From Neoconidiobolus thromboides FSU 785 (taxonomy: Eukaryota; Fungi; Entomophthoromycota), in the NCBI GenBank assembly GCA_025603075.1, contig MU626317.1, positions 46,250 to 110,249 on the forward strand: 64,000 bases of DNA, in the 5' to 3' direction. Within the stretch, counting starts at the first letter, position 1; each line of letters begins with the position of its first letter. Both the position numbers and the translations under genes were made by a program. The notes under the pieces were generated by a model. It was not told the origin of the DNA. It worked only from the letters and a program-made list of their open reading frames with translations, and did no database searches. Shown piece after piece: positions 1,874 to 28,857 of the stretch.

Positions 1874-3272
1874 ATGAAATTCGGTAAAAAAATTCAAGAA
1901 GAAGTAGAAACCATGGGTCCGAAATGGCAGGCCCATGCTATCCCGTATAAAAAGTTAAAAAAAGCAATTAAACATGATAGTCCATCCAGCACCAATTATG
2001 CTCAACTTTCACCTTTATTTACAAATCTTTGGATAGATCATTTAGATCAAGCAAATACAATTACGGAAGAATTTATAAAAGAGGAGGGAGAAGGAAGGAT
2101 GGATGATAAAGATTTCTATCATTTATTATTAAAATCCTTAAATCAATTAAAACTATTTCTTAATGAAGCATTTGAAGATACAAAATTAAGGATACTTCAT
2201 TTAAAAGAGGAGCTATTTGAGGCTACTAACCCATTTCAAAAAGATGTCGTTGTTTGGTAAATTTTTTAGTTCAGTTTTAAAGTAATGAGGTTTTAACAAT
2301 TTAACTTTTTTTAAAAATTATTTAGGAGAGAAATCTTTGAATTATATAAACAATCCCCAATATGGCAAATTAACTCAATACAAGATTTACATGGTATACG
2401 GTATTTAGATATGAAATGTCAATATGATTTATTTTTAAAACAATTATTAAAGTTAGAAAAAGTAAGTATTTATTCTTTAATTATATTATATTATTTTTAT
2501 TTCCATTTTTATTAGACAAAAAAATTTGATAATAATCATTCCAAAGAAGCATTATTAAAGTTTTTAGAGGTAAATTCCATATTGTATTATCAAGTGTTAA
2601 ATGTTGACTAAATCTAACCAGACTAATCAACAAATCTTATCATTAATAAAATTTTGTGAATTAAATCAAACAGCTGCTATTAAAATATTAAAAAAATTTA
2701 ATAAAGCCACCACATTAAAGTAAGTTAATTCTTGTTCCCATCTCTTTAGCCAATCAAAAAATTTAATCTTTTTTATTTTTTAGTTTAACGAACACATTAA
2801 TAAAAAAAGATAGCTCATTATTATTATATTGTCCGAAAGAATTAACTATTCAATGGTATGAGTTAATTGAAACTATACTACCTAATATTGAGGATTTTTC
2901 ATGCCCAATTTGTTTAGGTAAGTTAACTCATTCTAATCCTATATTATCATAATATAATATACCTTTTAATTTTAATTAGAAATCATATGGAAACCAACCA
3001 GGTTATCTTGTGGACACACTTTTTGTCATTGGTGTTGTATTCAATCTCAAGTACAACGAAAAAGAGATTGTCCCTTATGTCGATGTAGTGGTGCAATGTT
3101 AAAAGTAGATGAAAGAGGGACGGATAAAGCATTAGAAAATTATTTAAAATTGTATTTTCCAAGGGAGGTTAAAGTGAAAAGAAAACAACAGGAAAAAGAA
3201 ATGATGTTATGTGAAGTTAGTAATATCCGTGGGGGTGAATTTATGATTAATAATGGATGTTGTTTGATGTAA
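1874..3272 (+). CDS. SPX-domain + C3HC4 RING-finger protein (fungal Pqr1/plant NLA-like E3 ligase), multi-exon
   Basis: N-terminus MKFGKKIQEE...IPYKKLKKAIK is an SPX start. The frame continues across a GT-AG intron (2257-2325) as WREIFELY. Later exons give FSCPICL-EIIWKPTRLSCGHTFCHWCC...DCPLCR (RING) and end GCCLM-TAA at 3270-3272. Confidence 0.88.
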
Positions 3273-3678
3273 GAGGAGAGATCAAAAAGGATCATACATT
3301 TTTTATTGCATTTTTAAAAGTCATGTTATATTAATTAGATAATTAAAAACAATCAATTATAAATGAAATGATTAAAGTTTAAAAATAAAATTTTGTTATA
3401 TATTTATATATTTATATATTTATTTATTTATTTAGCATTATTGAATATTATTTTTAATATTTATTAAATTTAAGCCACCTCCATTTTTAATAATCTTTTC
3501 GAAATTAAACAATCTCTATTAACCAATCAAATCTATTTTATACTTCTAAATTTACCAATAAAATAAGATTACATCTCGAATTGTAAGAATTTTAAATCTT
3601 AAAAAATAGAAGTCAGCTTGACTAATTTGAATTCATTAAAATATAAAAATCGCTTTATTTTAACTAAAAACAATAGTG

Positions 3679-5499
3679 ATGGCAATACGAGCACGTAACA
3701 AAAAAAAGAGTAATTTAGGAGACAGTGTCCATGACAGTACCAATGATTCTATTGAAGTTAGTGAGCTTGATATAAGCAAAAAAGTGATTGTAGGTTGTCC
3801 AGGAGATGCTTTTTCCTTTATTGAATTATTATGTTTCACAATGATTTTACCTTTATTCACTACTTACATTGGTTCTTCGATTTATCTTTATTCACCAAAA
3901 TTAATTGAACCATACCATGGCAATTTCTTTCCTTACTATTTTTATAACTTAAGTGTTGGTATAATAATATTATTAGGTATATTATTAGGTATAATTTATG
4001 AAGCTAAATTCTTATTTCATTTACCTGCTAATATTGGAAGAATTGGTTTAGCATTAGTTTTATCACCCATTTATACGGACTTAATAGCTAGACAATCTAT
4101 GATTTTAGGGCCTTATTTAAGTGTTCAATTATCTTACTTATTACCAGTATATATACCTTTATTATGTTGTTCATGGATTAATAGTAGTTTATTTTTAAAA
4201 AATTGTACTTTTTTTAAAAATGCAGATACTTTAAATCATTCTATTACTTTATTTGTAATTCATATGGCTACTTTAATTATGGGATTAAGTTTATTAACTA
4301 CATTTCCATTGATCTATTCATTTACTAATTTAACATGTTATGGTTTGTTAATTAATGGTCTTATTTCAGCTTTGATTTTATATCTTCTCAATCTCACTTT
4401 ACTTCAGAACTTAAGACCTACAACTTATGATAAAGTATTAGTACCAACAGTTATTATTTGTATTTTATTAGCTACAATATCAAGACATGCTCAATGTTCC
4501 AGTGGATTATCGGAAAAACATTTAGATATAAATAAACCAATGGTAAATGGATTTATACCTTTAGCACGTACTGAGTCAATTACTGGATGGATTACAGTAG
4601 ATGAAGAAAAAGCAAGAGAAATACGCGTATTACGTAGTGGTCATTCAATTATTGGTGGTATTTATCCTAATTATCAAGAAAGTATATTTGGCACTTTTTA
4701 TTATATGGAAACAATTAAATTTTTATTACCTTATAAATCTACAGAAGAAAGAGGTAATGTATTACAAATCGGATTAGGTATTGGTGTATCAGCAAAGGAT
4801 TTAATTGAGGATGATTATAAAGTAGACATAATTGAAATTGATCCCATAGTTTATAATTACTCAAGAACTTATTTTGAATTACCAGAACCTAATAAAGTAT
4901 ATTTAGAAGATGGTAGAACAGTATTAGAAAATAAAATTAAAGGTTCCAGCTATGATTTTATATTACATGATGTATTTACAGGTGGTACAGTACCCTCTAC
5001 CTTATTTTCAATTGAAGCATTACAGTTATGTAAATACGCTATGAAACCAGATGGTGTATTAGTACTCAATTTTGTTGGCGGTATTCTCGGTCCTTATAAT
5101 ATGGCTTTTGAAATGGTAGCTACTACATTAAGAGCTGTATTTCCTTATATGAGATTATTTACGGAAGATTTTAAAGATAATGAAGAAGAAGTAGTTTCTA
5201 ATTTGATTAATTTAGTCTTCTTTGTTTCTGATAAACCAATTGAATTTGATTTACCACCTATTAGTCCAACCTATAGATCTATTAAAGAACATGCTATTAC
5301 TCATATGGAAAAATATGAAGTTAAGTTGGAAAAATACTTACCTCAATTAACTAAAGATTTGGAGTTAATTGATAAATATCATAGTATGGTAGTTACTGAT
5401 AAAGATAACAAATTAAATCAAGTTCAACATCATTCAGCTTATGAACATTGGTATAAAATGAAAGAGTTATTTCCATTAGAATATTGGGTGAAATATTAA
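3679..5499 (+). CDS. Membrane-anchored spermidine-synthase-like SAM-dependent methyltransferase
   Basis: Intronless ORF; the ATG is at 3679 (the track starts at GTG 3676). Hydrophobic multi-TM N-half, then LQIGLGIG, DIIEIDP, EDGR and DFILHDVFTGG class I MTase motifs. Confidence 0.8.
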   Translation: MAIRARNKKKSNLGDSVHDSTNDSIEVSELDISKKVIVGCPGDAFSFIELLCFTMILPLFTTYIGSSIYLYSPKLIEPYHGNFFPYYFYNLSVGIIILLGILLGIIYEAKFLFHLPANIGRIGLALVLSPIYTDLIARQSMILGPYLSVQLSYLLPVYIPLLCCSWINSSLFLKNCTFFKNADTLNHSITLFVIHMATLIMGLSLLTTFPLIYSFTNLTCYGLLINGLISALILYLLNLTLLQNLRPTTYDKVLVPTVIICILLATISRHAQCSSGLSEKHLDINKPMVNGFIPLARTESITGWITVDEEKAREIRVLRSGHSIIGGIYPNYQESIFGTFYYMETIKFLLPYKSTEERGNVLQIGLGIGVSAKDLIEDDYKVDIIEIDPIVYNYSRTYFELPEPNKVYLEDGRTVLENKIKGSSYDFILHDVFTGGTVPSTLFSIEALQLCKYAMKPDGVLVLNFVGGILGPYNMAFEMVATTLRAVFPYMRLFTEDFKDNEEEVVSNLINLVFFVSDKPIEFDLPPISPTYRSIKEHAITHMEKYEVKLEKYLPQLTKDLELIDKYHSMVVTDKDNKLNQVQHHSAYEHWYKMKELFPLEYWVKY

Positions 5500-15056: not shown

Positions 15057-18000
15057 CTAACTAAGCATATCTTCTCTATCAACCACATTATTATTCATAT
15101 TACTTCCATCTTCCAATTGTGAAAAGTTCAAGTAATGAGCAGGTCTATGACGTTCGTCATAAAATGGTAAAGGTACTTCTAAGCTAAGATGATATTCCTT
15201 ATCAGGCTGATGAGAAGCACCCTGGAAATTATAATTCCAAATTGAATCAACAGGTGAAAGGAAAAATCCGAAAAACTTGTCTGAAAGTAACATTTGAATA
15301 CGCTCATAATGGGTTGGTAAGTATCCTGCTGGGTTAGTACCGCTTAGATCTTTGTTGGATGCTCCCCACTCATTACCTGATGGCGTTACTTTGTAACAAG
15401 TGAGTGAACAAGAACCTGGCGTAAATGCACAGGTAATAATTACTGAAGTATCGATATCCCAACCTGGATAAGAGCCAAGTAATTTAGCATGTGTAGTAAC
15501 GTCTTGTGGTGAAAGATGGGGTAGCTCATTTGGTAGAGTATGGATCCAGCCTAAAGGTTCAAGGTCATTCAGCTGCTCATGTTCTGGTGGATTATTTGGA
15601 AGATGCACCATTTGGTGAGTACCCCATTGAGGCACCATAACTATGGAACGGATCTCTTTAACTTGTGGATTATCTTTTGGCGAAACACCATACAAAAATC
15701 CTGAAATTTGAGTTCGAAGATCAGAAATTATAATAAAACGCTTAAGTAAGTTTTTAGGCAACACATAAGTATACCCTGAATCCTTTAGATCATCACTAGC
15801 AACAAAGATGTGTTGGGTTCTCAATTGGAGATTGGTAGATGAAATAGCTCTTACTCTCCAATCTGTTTTAGAAGAAAAGGTTTGAGTTTCATACCCAGTT
15901 GTGGTAGTAGTAATAATTTCGTCTCCATGAATATTATGAGTTTTAGTGGTCACTGCCGTCAGTTGGCTTTGTTCTTTAGCTTGCTTTTCGATTTCAGCAA
16001 TTTGTTGACGTTGAAGCGAAGGAGCTGAAATTTCCATACCAAGGATAATATCACGGATTTCAGGTTGAGTCAAAGAAGCAACGTTAACATTATTCTTTTT
16101 ACCATAGTCTGCAAGGATAAGATCTTTTAAGGCAACCTCCACCTTAATCCATTCATCATCTGGTAAAGTGGGCCAGATATGATGTGCTTCAGTGATTGTA
16201 TTCTTATCAGGACGAAGAATCATTTTAGTCTTATCATTATTCACATGAAGTGCTCTTAAAATCAAAATCAAACGGAAGAAAGCAGTATATGAGGAAATCG
16301 TCGTTAGGAAATTATCATAAAGATTAAACAGACACATCATTGGCTCATTCGCTTTAAGGATAAGATCTCCAAACTTCTCTACTTTAAGACAAGCTTGGAA
16401 AGGTAATTGTAACTCAGAACCTTTGATCACAATATTGGGGAAATCTAAAAGATGAACCTCAAGTGGATCCAACATACCCTTACGAGTAACAATGATTTGT
16501 CTTGGTTGTTCTTCCACTGGAAGTGAACGAATAAGAGCAGCTACTTCTTCAGCAGTCTTCCACTTGGCTAATTGGCCAAGACGTTTTTGTCCAGCCCATA
16601 CCGAAGTATGAATAATCTTAAGGAAGAGATCACCATTACGTGGGTTGAAAATAAAGATAGCACCATTGATAGGTTTTGTGGTTAAATTACCTTCAAATGT
16701 CTTATGGATGGTAACGCGATAAACATTAGTATCATCCACAAACCAAATAATTTGATTTGAGAATAATTCACCGTAATTTGTTGAGTTAAGGTATGGTTCG
16801 GTTGGTTCAGATGAATACAATTGCACACCTTTACGAATACGTTCACGGAGTACATAGAGAGCAGGATTAGCTTTAATAATCTTACCCATGGCTTGCTGTG
16901 TAAGTGGCTTAAGCCCAGGGAACCAATTACCATAAGCAGAATAGAGATTGTAAGCAAGATCAACACCAATCATCATACCAGTAGGTGAAGGATAGATACT
17001 CATATTATCTGTAGTATAATCTAAGAACTTGGCACGAGTGTAACGTTCAACATCATGAGAGTCAAAGTCACCCCAGCGTAATTGGATATCAATCCAGAAT
17101 TTTTGAATAGTACCATTATCCATTGAATCTTTATTATCATTCAAAAGGGAAGGTCTGGATACACCCCATTTATAACTAGCAAACAAGAGAATATCCGCAC
17201 ATGAACTGTTCATTTTATAACTTTTACGTGGATGGATCGTTTCTTTTTGTACTGACTCAATTTGCAAGGCTTCGGATTCTTGGTCAAACACTTGCACCAT
17301 ATCCATCACCAATGCTTCGTGGATTTTTTGCCACAAATGTGCACGGAAAATTTGAATCAAGGAAATTTTAAGTGTTGGGATTTTACCATGCATAAAAATA
17401 CCTGTTAAATCAAGTTGTACTTGGAAACCAACATACACATTTGAATTGTGGACAACGGCATTATTACCAAGTAAAAAGAGCTTGTCGGAATCCTCGTCTA
17501 AAGTTATACCACAATATTGGCCTAGAGTTCCAGCTGTTTTAACAACATTAAATCTATATTCAACTGGTAAATATTGAACAGCGATTGGGGCCTCCCTGCG
17601 TTTGCGATCAATTGATGAGAGACTGAGTACTTTAGTTAAAGCACTGCAAGGCACAAACGTTACGCAGGACTTAAAGCCATTATTAGTTTCATGATTTGAA
17701 ACAGAATATTTGATACCAAGGGAGCGAGCTAAAGCTAAGGCACCAGTAACAATGTTTTGGTGTACTGAAGTAAATACTACTTTTTGGTATTTTTCTCTGG
17801 CTTCTTTGAAATCATTGTATCGGGTCAACTCCATCTTATTTTCAAGCTCTTTATCTTCTGGATTTGGATTAACAACTTCACCATCTGAATCAATTAAACC
17901 AGCCAAGAGATTCTCACGGACAGATATAGATTCAGTAAAAAACCATGTTGGTACAACCTTAGGTTGAGATCTTTTCATATTGAGTTGGCACATCAAATTC

Positions 18001-21000
18001 CATATTTTATTTGTTTTAATTTCTTTATTAACATTCACTTCTTCAGATGCTAACTCTCCAATGTTTAATGCTTCAGCTCCGATGTTATGATATATTGCTC
18101 TAACACGTTTCATTTGACTTATATAGTCTTTATTGTCAGCATTCTTTTCTGCTGTTCTATCGCCGGCAATCCATAAACCAACAAGCCAGGCAACATTGTT
18201 TACTTCGCTAGCAGGCAAGCCTTCTTTTCTACATATTTCTTCAAATTTATTATTTCCAAGCAATACTGGTGCTACAAGCTGGTAAGTTAATTGACGGATA
18301 CTTTCATCCACAAATGAGTATAATTGTGTCTCAAGTTCCCAAGTAATGGTTGATTTACTCAAGTTGATTAAATTGTCTCTAAATCCTTTTGCAGCCTCGA
18401 ATGTATTTGCTTTAGAGTTCTCATAATCTGATATATGGAACGATTTTTTGATCCAAGCAACCATTTGAATTTCCTCACCATTAAATTCTCTTGTTACAAG
18501 TGAAGTATAATTGATATAGAAGGATTCACCAGTTTGTTCATCTTTAGTCACTTCACCAACAGTCATATGGGTAGTCAGATGTAATAAATGCCTAGAATTA
18601 CTGGTATACTTAATAAGATCTAATCCCTCTTCATTACTTGACTTTTCTTGGTCATGATGTACTTCGCAAACCTCATACATAGTATCTTGTCCTGAGTGAA
18701 CCCCAGTTACCTTCCTTGGCTTTGAGTCCATACCCAATACATTGTCTCCAATTTTAATGTCTTTAATAGCACGAATAGACCCATCAGCCATGTATACAGG
18801 AGTAGAAGGAGCAAAGCACCTGTTGATCGTAGGTGACCACCAAAGAGTAAAACGACGATTTGGAATTTGATTCAAACCAGATCTCTGTGCATTTGTGAGC
18901 TTCTTGTATTTCATACTTTCTTCGAATCCAGAGTTATGTACTACCATACTATCCGATCTTAAGAATCTTTGATTACCGTCAACTAAGAAACCGTAATATT
19001 CTTGAGGTTCAGTCATTTTAATTGAAACAATTGGAACAAAGAATTCCTTGATGGCTACTGCATTGGTATCCGAATTGATACTATTTTTGGGATTTTCATC
19101 AATATATAAAGCTGGATCAGCTTCGACCTTTTCAAAATCTGTTTCATTAATATAAATAAATTCTTCACTTTGATTAATAGCAACTTTATAAAGAGACCAA
19201 ATATGCTGAACATGTTGAGGCAATGAAAGTAAATCTCTTACAGTTGTTTCAATTTGGTAAGTTTTAACTGCAGCAGAAGTTGTTTCTAAATGTTTCAAGA
19301 AATTAGCGCCTGCGTCACCTGCTTCTTTTTTAGTTTGAATTTCTTTTTCTCCAACCTTGAAGCTCATAGAGCAGTATCCACTATTGTACCAATAGACAGT
19401 ATAAGAAGATGAATCTTCGCTCCAGGACATAACCGCCTTATTTGAAGATGCTAAGCATAAAATATGATTACCAGTAACAGTTAAAGCTTCGCCAACACGG
19501 GGTAAAATTTCATATAATGGTGCAACACCTTGAACGACTTCCTTAATATTACGTGGTAATTGATCATCACCCATTAGTTTATCATTCACACTAACATCTT
19601 TAGCTAATTTTATAGATCCATCTTGGAGCATAAGTGGAGTAGCACCAGAGAAACAAGCTTTTTCCCAAAACAGACCTTCCCAAGTAGGGAAGTAAGTACC
19701 TTTAAACAATGTATGTTCTAAAATACCTTCAACACCACCCAAGGCTTGAATCATATCAGTACGATAATTATTTAGATTCCAAAGTTTACCATCGTGGCGT
19801 TGATGGGTCCACCAGAATGGATTATTTTTGAGTATTTGGTACTGTTTGAAATCAGTACGAACACGCCACCCTTTATCATAGGCAAGGGTATGTCGATCCT
19901 TTTGGAATAAGGTATTAATTCTAGGGATACCTCGATCCCAACTATCTTCCAAATCTTCAAGAGTAAGTCGACGATTTTGTGCTGTAGCTTCTTGACGTTT
20001 CAAAGCATATTCTGCCCATACACGTTGCGAATCAATAAACTCAGATTCCCAAGGTTGAAGATAACGAAATAAATTAGGAATCAAGGTATCTTCATCATGG
20101 GACATACCAGATCTAAAATGAGTGATACCAGTTTCAGTTTGACGTGACCATCTAAGGTCGGATTGTGGGATAAGTACATGGCCCATAGACAACATACCTA
20201 GACCACCCAATTCCTTTGGACAATTATGACCAATTAAAAAGTCACCATGACAGAATAATTGTGATTGTCCTTTTTCTACTTGGAAACCGTAATACTCATC
20301 AACTGCTTCAGCTTGGCTGGAGATCTCAAAGATACGATAATTGACTTTTGGAATGGCTGATTTCATACTTGCGAGTTTGACAAATTTACAAGGCAACACA
20401 TCTAAATCGCTACTTAAATACACTTTTCCTACATACTCAGTAGAATCTTTGCTTTTAGTCTTTGTAGCAATAGTAGATAAACCAAGGGATCGACCCAACT
20501 CATAGACTAATTTCAATACGGGCTCATTTGAATCAAGGCTTTTAATAAAAACATACCCATCATCTTGAACTTGACCACTTGAATCAATTAAACCTGCAAG
20601 TAAAGCACGACGAACATAGCCAGGCTCTTGTACAAAACGTTCGATTTCACTGTAATCATTAATTGTACTGTGATCTATGCACATCTTTGTTAGTAAAGCC
20701 TTAAATATGTCGATATCGATGTTCTTATTGGCTGAAACATTTGATTTTGTAAATCCAGAGCTACCAAGGTGTGCTCCGATTGCCCAAGCGTAATCTTCAG
20801 CAGAATCCTTATTAAGCTTGTTTTTAAAGCTATGGCAAGAATGTAATAAACTTGGTATGCTTCTATTTTTGCTTCCAATCGGCCATTCTTCGATCGAAGT
20901 ACTATATCTCATCATACATGGTAAAACTTTGGTTCCTGTTTTTATCATTTGTGATCTGTATTTATTGTATTCACTTACGCTTACAATCCATTCATTAGAA

Positions 21001-24000
21001 TTTGATAAACCTTCAATGACATTCATAATCACTTCATCAATATCATTTTCATGTTTAATATACGTTGCATAATCAAATTCTACCAACTTTTCGATTTCAA
21101 ATGGACGGATCAATTTAAGCATGGAATCGAATTTAAGCTTCCAATAATATACTTTATAAACTACGTTGGATTGGTTGGCTTTAACTTCTTCAATATCATA
21201 AAAGCACTGTACAACTCTTGAAACCTTTGGAATTTGTAAAACTAACAAATGGTTTTCATTACATAGAAATCCAGGCTCAAATAACAGCTCTTCATTATAG
21301 GCACAATTTAAAGCCTTTGAAAGTTTAACTCTATATAATGGTGCAGTACCTGAAACTAAATGTTCTACTCTACGGATTTTACCATCATCACCAAGCACTT
21401 GGTTTCCAACTTTGATTTCTTCAATTGACTTTGTGGTACCATTAGCTAAACGTATAGGCATCCCCTTACCATAACAATAGAATACAACAGGTGGGAAACG
21501 ACTAGGCATTTTAGAATTAAGACCAATTTTTACACGAGTTTGAATCTTTGATTCACTCTTAACCAAAAGATCTAAGATTTCACGAGTATGTACTACTGCT
21601 TCACGATAATATGTCATTAATCCAATCAAAGCTGTATTCCATTTGTTGACAATCTTTGAAAAGGTAGTGGATCCAGAGGACATTAATATTTGACGGATAC
21701 GATTATTGAAACGCTGGATAGACTCATCATCTACCCTTAAAAAGGCTTGTGCAGTACGTTCTTTAGTTTGTTCATTAATTAAATTCCATACACCATCTTT
21801 AAGTGAAAATGTTTCTTCCTTTGCACGAATCTTTGGCAAAATTCGAACTTCAAATCCACACATGGAGAATAAAAGATTGGGATTATCTCTTGAGTAAACA
21901 CTCACAAATGTTTCTTCCCAATCAAGGGTTGTAACTGATCTTGGTAAACGATTTTTCATATCCCAAAAGGTAGCACGACCTAAATTGACATCGTGCTTCA
22001 TCAAACGCATTCTACAATCACGTGGCCAGCATTTTTTGTTATTGTAACCAACAATATTTTCATTATTAGGATCCGGATGCTCTGTTAAATATCTTTGAAT
22101 CAAATCTCTTGATTCATCAGCACTGAATCTGAAAAGTATATAAATACGATCTATATAACGAGAGTAAAGTCTTATTGGATGTTTAGTTTCAGTAGGAACA
22201 TCTCTAAATTGCAAAAAGTCATTTGGGAGTTGAGGCGGTCCAGCCATTTCAGATGCTCTTTGTAAACCAAGGAGCAATAAATCCAAGACTAAGCCCCAGA
22301 ACTGATAAATGAACGAAGCAAATTGTAAACCACGAATTAAACCATAAGAATTTAAATGATTCATATCCTTATAATTAAGAACAACATTATTTTTTGCTGA
22401 CATATAATCGGCTAAATTATGATCCAAGATTAAACGTAAAAGTCTATTCAAAACTGTAATATCCACTTTCTCATATACTTTGTTAAGCCTTGTTTCTACC
22501 ATTACATTACATTCACCTTCAGATGTTTCCCAAATATCAGTAAGGTTGTTAATTCCTTGACACCATTTGTAAGTAAGCAATGGAGGAGGTTCATTATCTG
22601 ACGGTTTAATCCATGCTGGGAAGAGATGACGCTTATCAGCTTCATACCAAAGATATTGATCAAGGTAGGCATCAGTGATCTTTTCCATTGGTTCCACGTC
22701 ATAAACCGGGATAAGATGAGAGTATAAATCCATGAACTCAATTCCTACTTCTTTAAATGCTCTTTGGGTCAAAAGTAAACGTTTAATTCTAGAAAGAGCT
22801 TCATGAGGATTATCATAAGCTTGTTCAATTAAACCGAGTTCTTCACGTTGAGATTGATTTAAACGTCCTTTTACAGAGTACGCTTCTCTTAAGCGTTCAA
22901 GAGCAAGGATCAACAATTTGGTATCGTGTTTATATGAGAGTGGTGGGAAAGGAATAGGAGTGAATTTTCTAGATTCGAGCCAGTGTACTGTTGAAGTGAA
23001 GATTGCAACAGCTTCTTCAGGAGAAATATAAGGACCATCTTTAAGATAATTATGTTGTCTTTCTTGCTCAGCCTTAAGCCACAATCTGGTCAAACGTCCT
23101 AAATTCTTTTTGCAAACTGTTTTATCAACTGTTGCTCCTCTACGGATACGTTCACGATTATAATGGGCTACACTGGTCCACCAATCAGCTTTAGATTTGA
23201 CATAACGGAGGATCATATTTTCTATAGGGGTAGGCAGACCTGGTACTTTCCATGGAATATTGGCTTTCCAACAATTGTGGGCAACAATGAAATTTCCAAG
23301 TAAAAAGAGAGGGTCTTTACCATCTAACTCGAAACCAAAATATTCACCTTTACTTGAGACTTCAGTGACATCAAATTGGTTATTGTTGTTGTCTTCCATA
23401 GCTACACTTTCTCCTTTCAGTTTGTTTATAAAAGGAAGAGTTGAAAATTCCCTGCCAAAAATATTAATCTGTTCCTCCCTATTTGATACAAATAAACCAA
23501 GAGATCTTGCAACTTGTACTACTAATTGTTTTAAAATAGGACTGATCTCATTGACTTTGATTTTAAGCTTTAAATCAAGTTGATCGATATTGAATGGCAA
23601 TGATTCTAATATACCGGCTAATATATTCGAGCGGAATAACTTTGATTGGTTCATAACACATGAAGCTAATAAATCAGAAGAAGGAAGTTCTTTCAATTTG
23701 CTTATACAATCCCATGCCATACTTCCAACACTTATATTACTATTGGGTTCTTTTATTCTAGTAGATGAAGCAAATTGCTGACCAATAGCATAAGCTACCG
23801 AGTTGATCGGTGCTGGAGTTTGATCTAATTCACCAGATGCTTTAAAATGTAAATTATGGATAACTTGTTCTAAATCTAATTCTGAAGAATATGGGAATTC
23901 GTTGACAGATTGACGAATCATAGTGAAAGTAAAAGAGGAGTGAAGAAGAGTTTTGGAAAATTTAACATAATTAAGTGAAGAAACTTCCCATCCAGCATTC

Positions 24001-26660
24001 AAAATGGTTGAATGATCTTTTTGGAGAGCTTTAATTGCGCTTGGCTTGTCTTCAAATCTATATATTGTGACCGGGTGATTTTGTTTTAATTTAATGGTAG
24101 AACTGTCACCCCACGTGTATACTGATCCAACAACAGACGGTGCTTCAAACCCAAGTTCTTCATTATATCTGATTTGAGGATGATAAAATGCAGCATATTT
24201 CTTGTTGGAATCTTTAGACATAATTATATTACCTGAAGTAGAGCAATTAAGAACCAAAGTATGTTCATCATTACATGTAAATAATTCTTCCTGAGTTTCT
24301 TTATCGCTGAACTTATACAAAGTTGAATGACCATACATTGTATCCTTCACTTTCTTTGGTTTTTGATCTTTACCCAAAACTCTATCCCCGATCTCAATAT
24401 TTTCTACGCATTTTAAGTTACCATCAGCCATCATAACTTTAGTTCCACGAGCAAAACAACGCCATGCTTCACTGAGATGCTGTAAAATGGTTTTAGATTT
24501 ATTGGCAGAAATACCTTCAGGCATCATATCTGTAATATCATGCATTACTGCAGCACGAAGTTCGAGGTCATAGTGGGATTCTACTCTCTGCTTAGTAACC
24601 GTTTTAGCAATACCTTTAGAATGACGTCCTTCGAATTGACGAGCAAGTAAATTACCAAGCCAGCGTTCGAGAAGTGGGACAATACCACGTAAGAAAAATA
24701 GCCATACTCTCCATCCTGGGGCCCAAAAACCACAACCAGGACCTTTGCCGACTGGCCCAGTATTGAATCTATAGTAGATCAAATGTTTTAAATCCTTGGT
24801 GAGACGGACTTGTCTCATTAATTTATACTTATAACGATACATACCAGTAAGCTGACCAACATGGGCAAAGATATACTGAAGACCATCAGCTAATTGGAAA
24901 GCATCAACATTGCCTAAACGATATTGTACATGTGAATCAACCACAAGCTTAGTAAGCCTTAAAATTTCACGACAAAGATGGAAAGCATTTCCGAAACGAG
25001 ATTTCTTACGTTCTTTAGTTGTTAAAGTTTTAATAGGCTTTAAATTGAAATTATAATCAAGATGGAGATAATTCAAATTTTTACGATGAATTAATAAATT
25101 CAGCATATTGTAACCTTGACGACACACTTGTAACCCTGCTTCTACCCAATCAAGATCAGTAATTTGGAAAAACTTGGTTGCTTTCAATTGACGGAATAAG
25201 TACTTTTTGTTTAACGCTTTAGGTTTACGATGCTTCAAGACATTCAAAACATAACATTTTAGTAACTTTTGGTAAGAAACACGGACCTTTACGGGCTGAT
25301 CTGGTGGACAATGCTCTAAGTACCAATTTTTGACAAGTGGGATATCTTGAGCACGTCTAGTGTTACCTGAACGCTTATCAAAAGGATGAGGGGCCCAGTA
25401 AAGAGCAATAGCATTTGAAGTATTATCAGTGTAAAGTGGAGCATCTTCAAAGAAAGGAGTTACATTTTCTGGTAAAGAGAATTCGAGATCTTCATCTTCA
25501 TCACCAAATATACTTTGTTCATGTAATCCAGAGATGCTTTTATCTTCGAAATCACGTGTAGAAATTGGATTAATAATAGGATCAAAATAAAATGTAGGTA
25601 ATTGAGGGTCATCATTACGAATGTAAACAACAGTTGGATAATGATACCATGAAACATGAACTGCTCTTGGTAAGGAATTATATAAAAATGGAAAAGCAAT
25701 CTTATACTCAGTACGAATTTGTTGACGAATGATAATCTTATTAATATCATTAAACTCATTCCAATCTTCATCAGCTGGGTCTAAATCTCTATATAAAGGC
25801 TCAAACTTAGGGCCACCTGGAATAGCTAAATTAAGTGATTTAGCAGTTATAAAAGAATTGACATCAAAAAGATAAAAGTAATTCTTATCATTGAGATCAG
25901 ATAAAAGTTGATGTGCTAAACGGTACAACGCTGACATGATTGGAAGATCAAGGTTCCATTTACGATAAGTATCGCCATTGATGAATTTTGTGCCAAGGAG
26001 TGGTTTATGGTCATAAAACCATTCATAAACTGCGCTATCTTCTTCTGGATCTAACTCCATTTGAATAGGCTCAAGAGGATCGACATCTAATATATTGTCA
26101 CCATAATCTAATGGAGGTTCTTCATCATCAAAAGGAGGGAAACGCATACGTTTAAAATGACGACGATCTCTTTTTTCTCTGCGCATCATAATCCACATGG
26201 TACCCCATTGAGCAAGGTAGATTGGCTCAACCACACGAGGTACCTCATTAACAAAAGTGATAGCACCAGTGATATGATACAAAACTGGGACTTCTCTTTC
26301 TTGTTCCCAGGGCATAGGCATGTTTTCTAATAACTTTAAAACGGCATGAGGGATATATTTAAGGGCACCCAAATAGATACGCTTATCATGGCGAAATTTT
26401 TTCGAAGACATATCACCATGGTCTTTAATGATTTTTCTAACGTGCTCCGGTGGCATTTTTTGCTTTTCTTGTTCAGCGAACCCGAATTTTCTTTTGTCGC
26501 CATAACGTTTTGAGTTCATTTGTTGCCATCTCTTAGCCTTCTCTTTGATTTTTTCGAGAAATCTAGCATTTTGAGGATCTAAAAGGTTATCCTCAGAAGC
26601 AGAAACTTGATAAGGATAATAATTTGAATTATTAGGAGCAGAATCTCCCTGTTCAGTCAT
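15057..26660 (-). CDS. PRP8: Pre-mRNA splicing factor Prp8 precursor (3867 aa) containing four inteins; predicted mature protein 2355 aa
   Basis: One uninterrupted ORF; the ATG is at 26660 (the track starts at TTG 26675). Hallmark Prp8 sequence throughout, e.g. [51 protein letters not shown]-terminal Jab1/MPN region. Confidence 0.98.
17445..18818 (-). mobile_element. PRP8 intein 4 (458 aa), inserted after extein residue 1560 (WWSPTINR|SNVYVGF); most intact LAGLIDADG endonuclease
   Basis: Starts [13 protein letters not shown]; block [12 protein letters not shown]; [12 protein letters not shown] and [11 protein letters not shown]; ALARSLGI; QYCGITL; ends AVVHN followed by Ser+1. Confidence 0.95.
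18933..19655 (-). mobile_element. PRP8 intein 3 (241 aa mini-intein) at the canonical PRP8-a site (FWEKA|SGFEES), after extein residue 1522
   Basis: Starts [13 protein letters not shown]; block [12 protein letters not shown]; [13 protein letters not shown]; ends MVVHN followed by Ser+1. No LAGLIDADG motif is visible. Confidence 0.95.
20223..21476 (-). mobile_element. PRP8 intein 2 (418 aa), inserted after extein residue 1333 (FPPVVFY|CPKELGG); degenerate LAGLIDADG
   Basis: Starts [13 protein letters not shown]; block [12 protein letters not shown]; [12 protein letters not shown] and [11 protein letters not shown]; EYYGFQV; ends LIGHN followed by Cys+1. Confidence 0.95.
23274..24458 (-). mobile_element. 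PRP8 intein 1 (395 aa), inserted after extein residue 734 (HLSEAWR|CWKANIPW); degenerate LAGLIDADG remnant
   Basis: Starts [13 protein letters not shown]; block [12 protein letters not shown]; block F EYFGFEL; ends IVAHN followed by Cys+1. Endonuclease remnant NILAGILES...VARSLGL. Confidence 0.95.
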
Positions 26661-27672
26661 CTTTAAATTGAACAAATTGGAGATTGATAAAAAAGTGAGT
26701 TAAATTTCTTAGATTATTTAAAATATAACTTTTAAATAAAAAAGTTAGTTCAATTCAATCCAAGTTGAAGTTGGTTTAAACATCCACGAAATCTGAGATA
26801 CTTATGAGACAAATCCTAGCTTCCAGTTATTTGATTGGATGCTAATTGCGCATTCCAATCCAAAAAGAACAAAATCCTACTATATAGACAAAAAGTTTAG
26901 AGTAACAGATGCTCTCTACATTTTGCTCAAAACTGCGAAATATGCATTTGCGTTTGACTAACTAACTTCTATTTTGCAATTAGTTTTAGGACCAAACATT
27001 CTTTCAAAAGTAGCAATTCGAGCTGTGAGCGTTGTTTTTGGTTGAAATAATGAAACTATTAAATTAGAACTTAATAACGATACATGTTATATTACTTTCT
27101 TAATAAATTAGAGAATAATCATTATTTTAAAGTTATAATCCTTGATTTAATCCTTGGTTGTCTTTTTATATAATATTCAATAGGTTATTTTTTTATATTA
27201 TAATATGTTATTAGATAAACCAAATTGAGCTATTATTTTTAGGACTAACACAACTAATTGATCAATCACAATATTAAGAAATTTTGAACACAAACTTAGT
27301 TTATTTAATAAGCTTAAAAATTACTGATCTAGTTACAATCTAAAAATAAATAATCCCCAAGACATTATCTACAATAACGCTCTCTTCATCTTGATGCTAC
27401 AACCATATCTGATTGATAGTAAATAACGATATTAATCTTGTTCTTTAGCAGCTTAAAAACTTTCAATTCAAACAAGTAATTTTTATATTAAAATTTTTAT
27501 TAGAGAAGGAAACAAAATTGAAAACTTGGGCAGGTCAATTGAATTCTAAATTCAATTTCAATAACATAATAATACTTTAAACTTCATAAGAAAGCTAAGA
27601 GTAATGAGCTGTTCATCATAAAATTATTGCATGGTCAATAACCTTTGTACCAATAGCTTAATAATTCTTGCT

Positions 27673-28857
27673 TTATGGGTTATGTAAATAGCTATGGTGT
27701 TCATGTTGAGATCCATAAACGACAGAATCATGTTTAGGATAAGTTAAATAATCGTTAATAGGGGGAAGATAATGTTTCGAACTTCCATTCTGCATACTAC
27801 TGCTTACCATCAGTGGTGGTGTTTTTGGATCTTTGGATCCAACAGCCTGTCTTGAGGTTCCACAACAATTACTCAGATGAACTGTTGGTGCATGACAGCT
27901 CGTATTTTCTGGTGACTGAGTGGAAGTTAAAAATGATTTTGAGCTATCAAACGAGTGGGAGTTACTAGTATATTTTCCATGATAGTCACGCTTAGTACCG
28001 TAGTAAGGAAGTCCTTGATCGATTGGCTGTGTGCTATTTAAGTTGATCAGCTCAGGTCTTAAAGATGGAGCAGAATAAGAGTTCTCTCTACTTCTAGTGG
28101 CCCCATGCCTTATCCTATACTCTGGTGGGTTTCTGGAATGACTATAAATAGGCTCGAAGGATGCAGTGTTATTTATAAGGTCTTGAGTGTCATATAGAAG
28201 TTCATTAGCTAATTTTCTTCTACGACTTGCTCTGTCATCATAGTCATTTAAAGTATCTTGCAACATGTATTGAAAAGAAGATATCAGTTTCATTGCATTT
28301 TTTTGAAACTTTATATTTTGTTCAAATTGTTGTTGCAATTTAATAATAGTTTCATTCTGGGAAAATACCATTCTTTCCAAATCTTCTATTTTACGGGTTA
28401 ACTGTTCGGAGGTTCCAATTGAAGGTCTAGTTTCGGGCATATAACTTTGAGATAGATCTTCACCGATTGGAGTACTGTCCTTGTTTTTTTCTTCTTTGGA
28501 TGGCGGGCGGTAAGCCTTTCTTCTTATTTTAACAAAGAGTTCAGGGGTATCACGTTGAAAATCTGGATGCTTAAAATCCCATGAACAGGTAGTAGATGAC
28601 AAATGGAAAGCGTCAGAAAGTTTAGTAAAGCCATACATATTAAGCTGACGAACGAAACTTTGCCAGTTCCCATGCTTAAAGTAGTTGGGTAACACCTTAC
28701 TGCAAAATTGACTCAAATCTTTAACACCAAATGACTTGCCATCATCGCTCCAGCATATTAAATTATGATTGCTACTGTTTTGTAAGATGGTGTATAGTTT
28801 TTCAACAAAGGTAGGGACAGTATAATTGTCTTGGGAATTGGATTGCTTTTCTTTCAT
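27673..28857 (-). CDS. HSF-type DNA-binding domain transcription factor (394 aa)
   Basis: VPTFVEKLY...ICWSDDGKSF...VLPNYFKHGNWQSFVRQLNMYGFTK...FKHPDFQRD is an HSF DBD, followed by a coiled-coil segment. Confidence 0.9.
   Translation of the reverse strand: MKEKQSNSQDNYTVPTFVEKLYTILQNSSNHNLICWSDDGKSFGVKDLSQFCSKVLPNYFKHGNWQSFVRQLNMYGFTKLSDAFHLSSTTCSWDFKHPDFQRDTPELFVKIRRKAYRPPSKEEKNKDSTPIGEDLSQSYMPETRPSIGTSEQLTRKIEDLERMVFSQNETIIKLQQQFEQNIKFQKNAMKLISSFQYMLQDTLNDYDDRASRRRKLANELLYDTQDLINNTASFEPIYSHSRNPPEYRIRHGATRSRENSYSAPSLRPELINLNSTQPIDQGLPYYGTKRDYHGKYTSNSHSFDSSKSFLTSTQSPENTSCHAPTVHLSNCCGTSRQAVGSKDPKTPPLMVSSSMQNGSSKHYLPPINDYLTYPKHDSVVYGSQHEHHSYLHNP

What the first reader, a model, noticed from the sequence alone, without database searches (positions are those of the whole stretch)
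15057..26660. A single PRP8 gene carrying four inteins
Seen in sequence: the Prp8 ORF is interrupted in frame by four insertions (395, 418, 241, 458 aa; 1512 aa, about 39% of the precursor). Each starts with Cys, carries block B/F motifs, ends His-Asn and is followed by Cys or Ser. Removing them rejoins conserved Prp8 motifs exactly and gives 2355 aa. Established knowledge: nuclear inteins in eukaryotes are rare, and fungal PRP8 inteins are mostly single and at site a; I recall two in Batrachochytrium. Inference: this essential spliceosome core protein needs four protein-splicing events to mature, an unusually heavy load that may be undescribed. I cannot confirm novelty without a search.
Basis: partly seen in the sequence, partly recalled or inferred. 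Interest (0 to 1): 0.95.

Follow-up and report, generated by a model that had tools for sequence, protein, structure and literature searches.

The report
Four inteins in one fungal PRP8
The PRP8 splicing-factor gene of the fungus Neoconidiobolus thromboides really does carry four self-splicing protein inserts (inteins), which the public gene model wrongly removed as introns, but heavier intein loads in PRP8 are already published or sit in public protein records.

Summary
One intact ORF on the minus strand (15060-26660, 3867 aa) encodes Prp8 interrupted by four in-frame inteins of 395, 418, 241 and 458 aa. Removing them gives a 2355-aa Prp8 that is 80-83% identical to animal, plant and amoeba Prp8, with gap-free junctions.

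The exteins match the Neoconidiobolus thromboides FSU 785 Prp8 record exactly. That 2331-aa public model cuts the four inteins out as pseudo-introns. An RNA-seq contig of 11,652 nt covers the gene without a single joint, while the neighbouring intergenic DNA has zero RNA depth. RNA-level removal is therefore refuted.

All four inteins keep Cys1, the block-B His, His-Asn and a +1 Cys or Ser. Only intein 4 keeps a plausible LAGLIDADG nuclease.

Novelty is limited:
- Anaeramoeba ignava Prp8 has five inteins (published 2023).
- GenBank Prp8 records of Dimargaris carry nine, Coemansia three to six.
- Two Coemansia records occupy all four of this gene's sites.

This is a new, so far mis-annotated member of a known kind. 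The site TINR|ANVYVG maps to no published site letter. Earlier scan notes concern this same stretch only.

The parts
15057..26660 (-). PRP8 precursor CDS with stop codon: 3867 codons, no introns
   Evidence: All Prp8 Pfam domains are present (PRO8NT, PROCN, RRM_4, U5_2-snRNA_bdg, U6-snRNA_bdg, PRP8_domainIV, JAB, PROCT). One RNA contig covers it without joints.
26661..26705 (-). 5' UTR; mRNA 5' end at 26705
   Evidence: the RNA contig of run X2 ends at 26705 and runs into Illumina adapter. RNA depth is zero from 26706 to 27532.
24459..26660 (-). extein 1 (aa 1-734)
23274..24458 (-). intein 1, 395 aa, at SEAWR|CWKAN (published site b). LAGLIDADG motifs are degenerate ([14 protein letters not shown]).
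   Evidence: Site b is at position 735 in PMC3749507.
21477..23273 (-). extein 2 (aa 1130-1728)
20223..21476 (-). intein 2, 418 aa, at PPVVFY|CPKELGG (+1 Cys where most empty alleles have Thr). Both nuclease catalytic positions are Ser ([13 protein letters not shown]).
   Evidence: The best relatives are allelic inteins of Dimargaris (31-33% identity) and Coemansia.
19656..20222 (-). extein 3 (aa 2147-2335)
18933..19655 (-). intein 3, 241-aa mini-intein at LFWEKA|SGFEES (site a), no endonuclease domain
   Evidence: The best solved relative is the Cryptococcus Prp8 intein 6MX6. It is 35-44% identical to site-a inteins of Mucoromycota, Entomophthora and Batrachochytrium.
18819..18932 (-). extein 4, only 38 aa between inteins 3 and 4
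17445..18818 (-). intein 4, 458 aa, at SPTINR|SNVYVG (+1 Ser where empty alleles have Ala). PI-SceI-type with the best-kept LAGLIDADG endonuclease.
   Evidence: PI-SceI E=1.8e-42; allelic inteins found only in Coemansia, 36-41% identity
18153..18194 (-). intein 4, first LAGLIDADG motif [14 protein letters not shown] (Asp present, spacing differs by one residue from PI-SceI GLWIGDG)
17874..17909 (-). intein 4, second LAGLIDADG motif [12 protein letters not shown] (aligned residue for residue with PI-SceI's [12 protein letters not shown] motif)
15060..17444 (-). extein 5 (aa 3073-3867)

Best explanation
This is the single-exon PRP8 gene of Neoconidiobolus thromboides (Entomophthorales). It is transcribed and translated as a 3867-aa precursor that contains four class-1 inteins. 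Each intein is predicted to excise itself by the standard route: an N-S acyl shift at Cys1, transesterification to the +1 Cys or Ser, and cyclisation of the terminal Asn. The result would be a 2355-aa mature Prp8 and four free inteins. The four are separate, old residents rather than recent copies of one another. Intein 3 is a site-a mini-intein. Inteins 1 and 2 are PI-SceI-type inteins whose LAGLIDADG nucleases have lost their catalytic acidic residues. Intein 4 is a PI-SceI-type intein that may still home. Shown here: the sequence anatomy, the homology, retention of the inserts in mRNA, and their presence in several independent DNA and RNA data sets. Inferred: the protein splicing itself, and any nuclease activity.
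For: - The ORF is intact and the borders are exact.
- Hom_end_hint scores above the gathering cut-off for all four inserts.
- PDB sequence hits to PI-SceI have E=1.8e-42 (intein 4), 6.4e-18 (intein 1) and 1.6e-11 (intein 2). Intein 3 hits the Cryptococcus Prp8 intein at 9.5e-11.
- Cys1, the block-B N/TxxH His, the terminal His-Asn and a +1 Cys or Ser are present in all four, and the same residues are conserved in most allelic inteins (some Coemansia site-1333 inteins end Ser-Asn or Ala-Asn).
- The spliced extein is 80-83% identical to Prp8 of a bird, an insect, a plant, an amoeba and a fungus; junctions are gap-free in all but the vertebrate record at site 1560.
- RNA run X2 holds one 11,652-nt contig with 0 differences and no joints across the gene. 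It ends in adapter at 26705. The intergenic stretch 26706-27532 has zero depth in RNA runs X2 and X4 but full depth in DNA runs X1 and X5.
- Independent runs from related organisms also hold the intein DNA: X3 (6 differences in 5991 bases), X4 and X5.
- Inteins 2, 3 and 4 are closest to inteins at the same site in other fungi. The four are only 23-25% identical to each other.
- Among the listed variants of related strains, the extein has 28 synonymous and 0 non-synonymous changes, while the inteins have 19 synonymous and 20 non-synonymous.
- Codon usage of the inteins matches the exteins (GC3 0.25 against 0.265, RSCU r=0.86).
Against: - No protein-level evidence is available, so splicing of each intein is inferred from conserved residues and from Prp8 being essential.
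- Intein 1 is only 21-27% identical to any other intein, including those at its own site.
- The first LAGLIDADG motif of intein 4 reads AGDR instead of GDG, so nuclease activity is uncertain.
- I could not search the whole genome for a second, intein-less PRP8 copy. Only one N. thromboides Prp8 appeared among the best 120 hits, and the scan's notes list no other.
- The variant counts use only the best-supported subset that read laying printed.
Confidence: 0.88

Rival explanations
1. The four inserts are spliceosomal introns removed from the mRNA, as the public gene model of N. thromboides FSU 785 (P0001, 2331 aa) implies.
For: P0001 equals this ORF with aa 738-1133, 1729-2147, 2336-2574 and 2622-3060 left out.
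Against: - The model's borders are shifted. They keep 3-12 intein residues and drop extein residues such as CWKA, which is typical of homology-guided gene calling.
- The inserts are in frame and free of stops, and they carry full intein motifs.
- The RNA contig of run X2 spans the whole gene with no joint, while true intergenic DNA is absent from that library.
Confidence: 0.02
2. The locus is an assembly chimera or a strain-specific artefact.
For: None found. An 11.6-kb single-exon gene with 39% extra sequence invites the question.
Against: Single contigs span the region in the source DNA run X1, in an independent DNA run X3 of another organism label (6 differences in 5991 bases) and in RNA run X2. 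Contigs from X4 and X5 cross intein-extein junctions.
Confidence: 0.01
3. The gene is a decaying or redundant copy. A second, intein-less PRP8 elsewhere supplies the functional protein, so the inteins need not splice.
For: The whole genome could not be searched here.
Against: - The 3867-codon frame is intact.
- The listed extein variants among related strains are 28 synonymous and 0 non-synonymous.
- RNA word depth is about 1000, against 567 for the neighbouring gene.
- Only one N. thromboides Prp8 was seen, and the scan has no note of a second copy.
Confidence: 0.03
4. One or more of the inteins, most likely the divergent intein 1, splices slowly or conditionally, so that protein splicing gates the supply of mature Prp8 (conditional protein splicing, as proposed for the Cryptococcus Prp8 intein).
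For: Metal- and redox-sensitive splicing of the site-a Cryptococcus intein is published (PMC6805012). All four inteins here use a reactive Cys1, and two have a Cys at +1.
Against: Nothing in the sequence distinguishes regulated from constitutive splicing. Relaxed constraint on the intein bodies fits selfish residents better than regulators.
Confidence: 0.06

Closest known systems
Anaeramoeba ignava BMAN Prp8 with five inteins (Gallot-Lavallee et al. 2023, PMC10710043)
   Same: A single Prp8 carries many inteins at separate sites, including sites a and b. The inteins are PI-SceI-like with LAGLIDADG domains.
   Different: The host is a metamonad with about 100 inteins genome-wide. Here the host is a fungus, and no other intein has been noted in its genome so far. 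The site TINR|ANVYVG is not among the sites that paper names in its text.
Capsaspora owczarzaki Prp8 (three inteins: b, e, f) and Batrachochytrium dendrobatidis Prp8 (two: b, a) (Monier et al. 2013, PMC3749507; InBase)
   Same: Site b (position 735) and site a are shared. The Capsaspora 'e' intein ends ..SPLFCLADFLVAHN, the signature tail of all inteins at VVFY|[T/C]PKELGG, including intein 2 here (..[14 protein letters not shown]).
   Different: These proteins carry fewer inteins. Equating site e with this gene's second site is inferred from the tail signature only; I could not fetch the Capsaspora protein.
Kickxellomycotina Prp8 records in GenBank (Coemansia spp., Dimargaris spp., Smittium spp.)
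   Same: They belong to the same broad zygomycete assemblage (Zoopagomycota in the classification the cited papers use). Coemansia sp. Benny D115 (P0010) and Coemansia sp. RSA 989 (P0040) have inteins at all four of this gene's sites. Inteins at sites 1333 and 1560 are the closest relatives of inteins 2 and 4.
   Different: They carry more inteins (Coemansia 3-6, Dimargaris 8-9) at additional sites. Their site-1560 nucleases are degenerate, whereas the window's copy keeps [10 protein letters not shown] and the block-D Lys. I found no paper describing them.
PI-SceI (VMA1-derived endonuclease, S. cerevisiae; PDB 1DFA, 1VDE, 1LWS)
   Same: Intein 4 aligns over its full length (E=1.8e-42) with the same block order and an identical second LAGLIDADG motif core (LAGLIDSDG). 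The Lys aligned with PI-SceI's VKNIP is kept.
   Different: The host protein and insertion site differ. The first motif reads GLWIAGD against GLWIGDG. Nuclease activity is untested.
Cryptococcus neoformans Prp8 site-a mini-intein (PDB 6MX6; Green et al. 2019, PMC6805012)
   Same: Intein 3 sits at the same site (WEKA|SGFEE) and is also a mini-intein without a nuclease. It is the best solved-structure match for intein 3.
   Different: Intein 3 is 241 aa against 171 aa, with a longer linker. It is closer to the site-a inteins of Mucoromycota, Entomophthora and Batrachochytrium (35-44% identity).

Membership tests
Intein (class 1, Hint fold) | In-frame insertion in a conserved host protein; deleting it restores a colinear host sequence | tested here: met
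   (borders); junctions gap-free against four of five intein-less Prp8 proteins, and against the fifth (vertebrate) at three of four sites, at 80-83% identity.
Intein (class 1, Hint fold) | Block A nucleophile (Cys or Ser) as first residue | tested here: met
   Cys1 in all four
Intein (class 1, Hint fold) | Block B (T/N)xxH with conserved His | tested here: met
   NDEH, NENH, TGNH and NSRH. The His is invariant among the four and in their allelic relatives.
Intein (class 1, Hint fold) | Block G ending His-Asn, followed by Cys, Ser or Thr at +1 | tested here: met
   HN|C, HN|C, HN|S, HN|S
Intein (class 1, Hint fold) | Sequence homology to Hint or intein splicing domains | tested here: met
   Pfam Hom_end_hint at 89.6, 77.7, 67.8 and 164.6 bits against a cut-off of 32.1. 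PDB hits to PI-SceI and the Cryptococcus Prp8 intein.
Intein (class 1, Hint fold) | The insert is kept in mature mRNA (removed at the protein level, not the RNA level) | tested here: met
   An 11,652-nt RNA contig without joints. The intergenic control has zero RNA depth.
Intein (class 1, Hint fold) | Autocatalytic protein splicing demonstrated | not testable with these tools
   Needs junction peptides by mass spectrometry, a western blot or reporter assays.
LAGLIDADG homing endonuclease domain (PI-SceI type) | Two LAGLIDADG motifs, each with a catalytic acidic residue, plus the block-D Lys | tested here: inconclusive
   - Intein 4: [10 protein letters not shown] and the Lys are kept; the first motif reads GLWIAGD.
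- Intein 2: Ser at both catalytic positions.
- Intein 1: both motifs degenerate.
- Intein 3: no nuclease domain.
[quoted passage not shown] | Full domain set (PRO8NT, PROCN, RRM_4, U5/U6-snRNA binding, domain IV, JAB/MPN, PROCT) and high identity to orthologues | tested here: met
   (80-83% identity)
Prp8 intein site a (WEKA|SGFEE) | Same insertion point, and closest relatives at that point | tested here: met
   Intein 3:
Prp8 intein site b (EAWR|CWKAN, position 735) | Same insertion point, and closest relatives at that point | tested here: inconclusive
   The position is identical. Intein 1 is only 21-27% identical to site-b inteins and no closer to them than to inteins at other sites.
Prp8 intein site e (Capsaspora) | Same insertion point as the published site e | tested here: inconclusive
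   The tail signature SPLFC..DF...HN is shared. The published extein context could not be retrieved.

The most novel reading that the evidence does not exclude
The zygomycete fungi grouped as Zoopagomycota hold an undescribed, ancient and partly vertically inherited Prp8 intein hot spot. N. thromboides carries four, including one at a site (TINR|[A/S]NVYVG) with no published letter, whose nuclease may still be active. Dimargaris carries nine in one protein, which would exceed the published maximum of five inteins in a single protein. Many of these inteins are invisible in surveys because gene models remove them as introns.
Probability: 0.55. Interest if true: 0.55.

Novelty: new member of a known kind. 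Interest (0 to 1): 0.4.

Why it matters
Prp8 is the catalytic-core scaffold of the spliceosome. Here it can only mature after four independent protein-splicing reactions, in a genome that a first-stage note (unchecked) calls intron-rich and that therefore presumably depends on splicing. This makes the gene a natural test bed for how multi-intein precursors fold and splice.

The case also shows concretely that automated gene models can hide inteins as introns, so published censuses of eukaryotic inteins are probably underestimates. Green et al. 2018 list no Prp8 intein in Zoopagomycota.

One gene holds a mini-intein, two inteins with dead nucleases and one with a possibly live nuclease. That gives a compact view of the homing cycle. 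The insertion site at TINR|ANVYVG, together with the much heavier loads seen in Kickxellomycotina records, suggests that the published map of seven or eight Prp8 sites is incomplete.

Tried and rejected
- **Site letters e and f.** I tried to assign published letters to the second and fourth sites. The supplements of Green 2018 give intein sequences for Capsaspora but no extein context. The supplements of the Anaeramoeba and Bathycoccus papers are not held, and those of Green 2019 hold no motif. Word-based searches with intein 2 and intein 4 did not retrieve the Capsaspora protein. The exhaustive representative search with intein 2 returned only Prp8 fragments with inteins at the same site, plus generic intein hits.
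- **Conflicting site names.** The Anaeramoeba paper's text gives site b as VMDL/CQVF and site d as EAFR/CWKA. That conflicts with Monier 2013, where b is at position 735 and d is 87 residues after a. I followed Monier, whose numbers fit this extein exactly (and my count).
- **Recent intragenic duplication of inteins.** Rejected: the four are 23-25% identical to each other.
- **Recent horizontal arrival.** Not supported by composition: GC3 and codon usage match the exteins.
- **Failed call.** One Pfam call failed on a size limit and was repeated.


Full report
**Observation**

The window holds one long ORF on the minus strand, 15057..26675. From the ATG at 26660 it encodes 3867 residues. Pfam finds the complete Prp8 domain set plus four stretches of Hom_end_hint.

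The four inserts sit at these positions:

| Intein | Residues | Length | Window coordinates | Junction |
|---|---|---|---|---|
| 1 | 735-1129 | 395 aa | 23274-24458 | SEAWR\|C...HN\|CWKAN |
| 2 | 1729-2146 | 418 aa | 20223-21476 | PPVVFY\|C...HN\|CPKELGG |
| 3 | 2336-2576 | 241 aa | 18933-19655 | LFWEKA\|C...HN\|SGFEES |
| 4 | 2615-3072 | 458 aa | 17445-18818 | SPTINR\|C...HN\|SNVYVG |

Each insert alone scores above Pfam's gathering cut-off for Hom_end_hint.

By sequence against solved structures:
- Inteins 4, 1 and 2 match PI-SceI (E=1.8e-42, 6.4e-18 and 1.6e-11).
- Intein 3 matches the Cryptococcus Prp8 site-a intein 6MX6 (E=9.5e-11).

With the inserts removed, the protein is 80-83% identical to Prp8 of a bird, an insect, a plant, Acanthamoeba and a mortierellalean fungus. 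No gap occurs within 12 residues of any junction, except at site 1560 in the vertebrate record, whose sequence differs locally there.

**Organism and the public annotation**

The best database hit is the Prp8 record of Neoconidiobolus thromboides FSU 785 (P0001, 2331 aa). This species belongs to Entomophthorales.

P0001 maps onto the ORF as five exact blocks: aa 48-737, 1134-1728, 2148-2335, 2575-2621 and 3061-3867. The public gene model therefore removed the four inteins as introns, at shifted borders. Those borders keep a few intein residues and lose extein residues such as CWKA. This explains why the inteins are not visible in protein databases.

**RNA or protein level**

Run X2, an RNA library of the same organism label, holds a single 11,652-nt contig. 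It lies on the gene with 0 differences and no joint. It ends at 26705, 45 nt upstream of the ATG, where it runs into Illumina adapter.

The intergenic stretch 26706-27532 has zero depth in RNA runs X2 and X4 but full depth in DNA runs X1 and X5. The RNA libraries are therefore not DNA-contaminated at this locus. The mature mRNA keeps all four inserts, so removal must be post-translational.

Independent runs confirm the structure. These are DNA run X3 (6 differences in 5991 bases), DNA run X5 and RNA run X4, the last two from more diverged organism labels. Their contigs cross intein-extein junctions, which excludes an assembly chimera.

**Anatomy of the four inteins**

All four keep the residues needed for class-1 protein splicing: Cys1, the block-B His in an N/TxxH motif, the penultimate His, the terminal Asn, and Cys or Ser at +1. 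Nearly all allelic relatives conserve the same residues; several Coemansia site-1333 inteins have Ser or Ala in place of the penultimate His.

- **Intein 3** has no endonuclease domain.
- **Intein 2** has LAGLIDADG-like motifs with Ser at both catalytic positions ([13 protein letters not shown]). Every allelic intein at this site is degenerate in the same way.
- **Intein 1** is degenerate at both motifs ([14 protein letters not shown]).
- **Intein 4** aligns with PI-SceI over its whole length. It keeps [10 protein letters not shown] (aligned with PI-SceI's [12 protein letters not shown] motif), the block-D Lys, and an Asp in the first motif, though with one extra residue (GLWIAGD). It is the only member of its allelic family that keeps these residues.

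The four inteins are only 23-25% identical to each other, so they are not recent copies. Their GC3 and codon usage match the exteins, which argues for long residence.

Among the variants that read laying listed for related strains, the extein shows 28 synonymous and 0 non-synonymous changes. The inteins show 19 synonymous and 20 non-synonymous, concentrated in the middle of intein 2. This fits an essential host protein carrying weakly constrained passengers. It rests on a subset of the variants.

At the second site most empty alleles have Thr at +1 (40 of 57 intein-less homologues; 14 have Cys). At the fourth site they have Ala (55 of 59). All occupied alleles have Cys and Ser respectively.

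**Comparison with what is known**

The literature describes seven Prp8 sites, a to g (PMC6805012):
- two inteins in Batrachochytrium (b and a);
- three in Capsaspora (b, e, f) (PMC3749507);
- five in Anaeramoeba ignava BMAN (PMC10710043).

Intein 3 is at site a. Intein 1 is at site b: Monier's position 735 is exactly this extein's residue 735.

Global alignment of the long Prp8 records returned shows that public protein databases hold much heavier loads:
- Dimargaris verticillata and D. xerosporica: nine inteins.
- D. cristalligena: eight.
- Coemansia species: three to six.
- Smittium: three or four.
- Entrophospora candida: four.

Together these cover at least 16 distinct sites. Coemansia sp. 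Benny D115 (P0010) and Coemansia sp. RSA 989 (P0040) have inteins at all four of this gene's sites, plus others.

Inteins 2, 3 and 4 obey the allelic rule, meaning each is closest to inteins at the same site:
- Intein 2 is closest to the Dimargaris and Coemansia inteins at VVFY|CPKELG (31-33% identity).
- Intein 4 is closest to the Coemansia inteins at TINR|SNVYV (36-41%). No other host was found.
- Intein 3 is closest to site-a inteins of Mucoromycota, Entomophthora and Batrachochytrium.

The tail ..SPLFC..DF...HN is shared by all inteins at the second site and by the published Capsaspora 'e' intein. That site is therefore probably site e, but this is an inference. The fourth site matches no published letter that I could map.

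I found no paper on Prp8 inteins in Zoopagomycota. Green et al. 2018 list only an RNA-polymerase intein for that phylum.

**Verdict**

The added evidence is that the mRNA keeps the inserts and that the public model is wrong.

The claim of an exceptional or undescribed load does not hold in general. Five inteins in one Prp8 are published, nine exist in GenBank records, and the same four sites are occupied in Coemansia. The case is a new, previously hidden member of a known kind, in a lineage whose Prp8 intein richness seems not to have been written up.

Protein splicing and nuclease activity remain inferences that need proteomics and reporter assays.

Noticed in passing
P0006 and P0008 (Dimargaris verticillata and D. 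xerosporica Prp8 records, 5994 and 6000 aa): Each record carries nine C...HN|C/S inteins, at extein sites 562, 620, 734, 946, 1333, 1439, 1522, 1609 and 1641. D. cristalligena (P0083) has eight. The published maximum I found for any single protein is five. No paper in the library mentions these.
   Followed up: partly
Prp8 records (Coemansia, Smittium, Entrophospora, Geranomyces, Mortierella alpina P0030, ENA protein P0125): Fungal Prp8 records show at least 16 distinct intein insertion sites, against 7-8 published. Examples are AFHL|CREIL, QIRx|CKDLK, YYRFN|TGPV, DKTV|CKKNL, NPHE|CLNR, WYEA|SKR, NTLF|SKDRH, YWTH|SRHDG, MNSS|CADIL and GNLT|TKPIN.
   Followed up: partly
P0001 against window 15060-26660: The public N. 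thromboides FSU 785 Prp8 model (2331 aa) starts at Met48 and removes all four inteins as pseudo-introns at shifted borders. The B. dendrobatidis JAM81 model P0049 (2390 aa) likewise lacks the two inteins present in P0003 (3349 aa).
   Followed up: partly
Intein-less Prp8 models P0052, P0055, P0058, P0061, P0064, P0066, P0068, P0070, P0071, P0073, P0096 and P0047: Glomeromycotina and some Mucorales models have Cys instead of the usual Thr at +1 of the VVFY|TPKELGG site. Umbelopsis isabellina also has Ser at +1 of TINR|A. These are either scars of lost inteins or inteins hidden by gene models.
   Followed up: no
window 17300-26660, variants in runs X3, X4 and X5: Listed variants: 28 synonymous and 0 non-synonymous in exteins, against 19 synonymous and 20 non-synonymous in inteins. 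Eleven of the non-synonymous changes lie in the central part of intein 2. RNA run X4 shows two haplotypes at several intein stretches.
   Followed up: partly
window 26706-27532 and 27533-28790: The intergenic gap has no RNA coverage. The neighbouring gene's transcript contig (2451 nt) begins at 27533, next to adapter sequence, so both transcript ends are sharply defined in run X2.
   Followed up: no
PMC10710043, main text: That paper's text gives site b as VMDL/CQVF and site d as EAFR/CWKA. This is the reverse of Monier et al. 2013 (b at position 735, d 87 residues after a). Site letters in the literature are not used consistently.
   Followed up: yes
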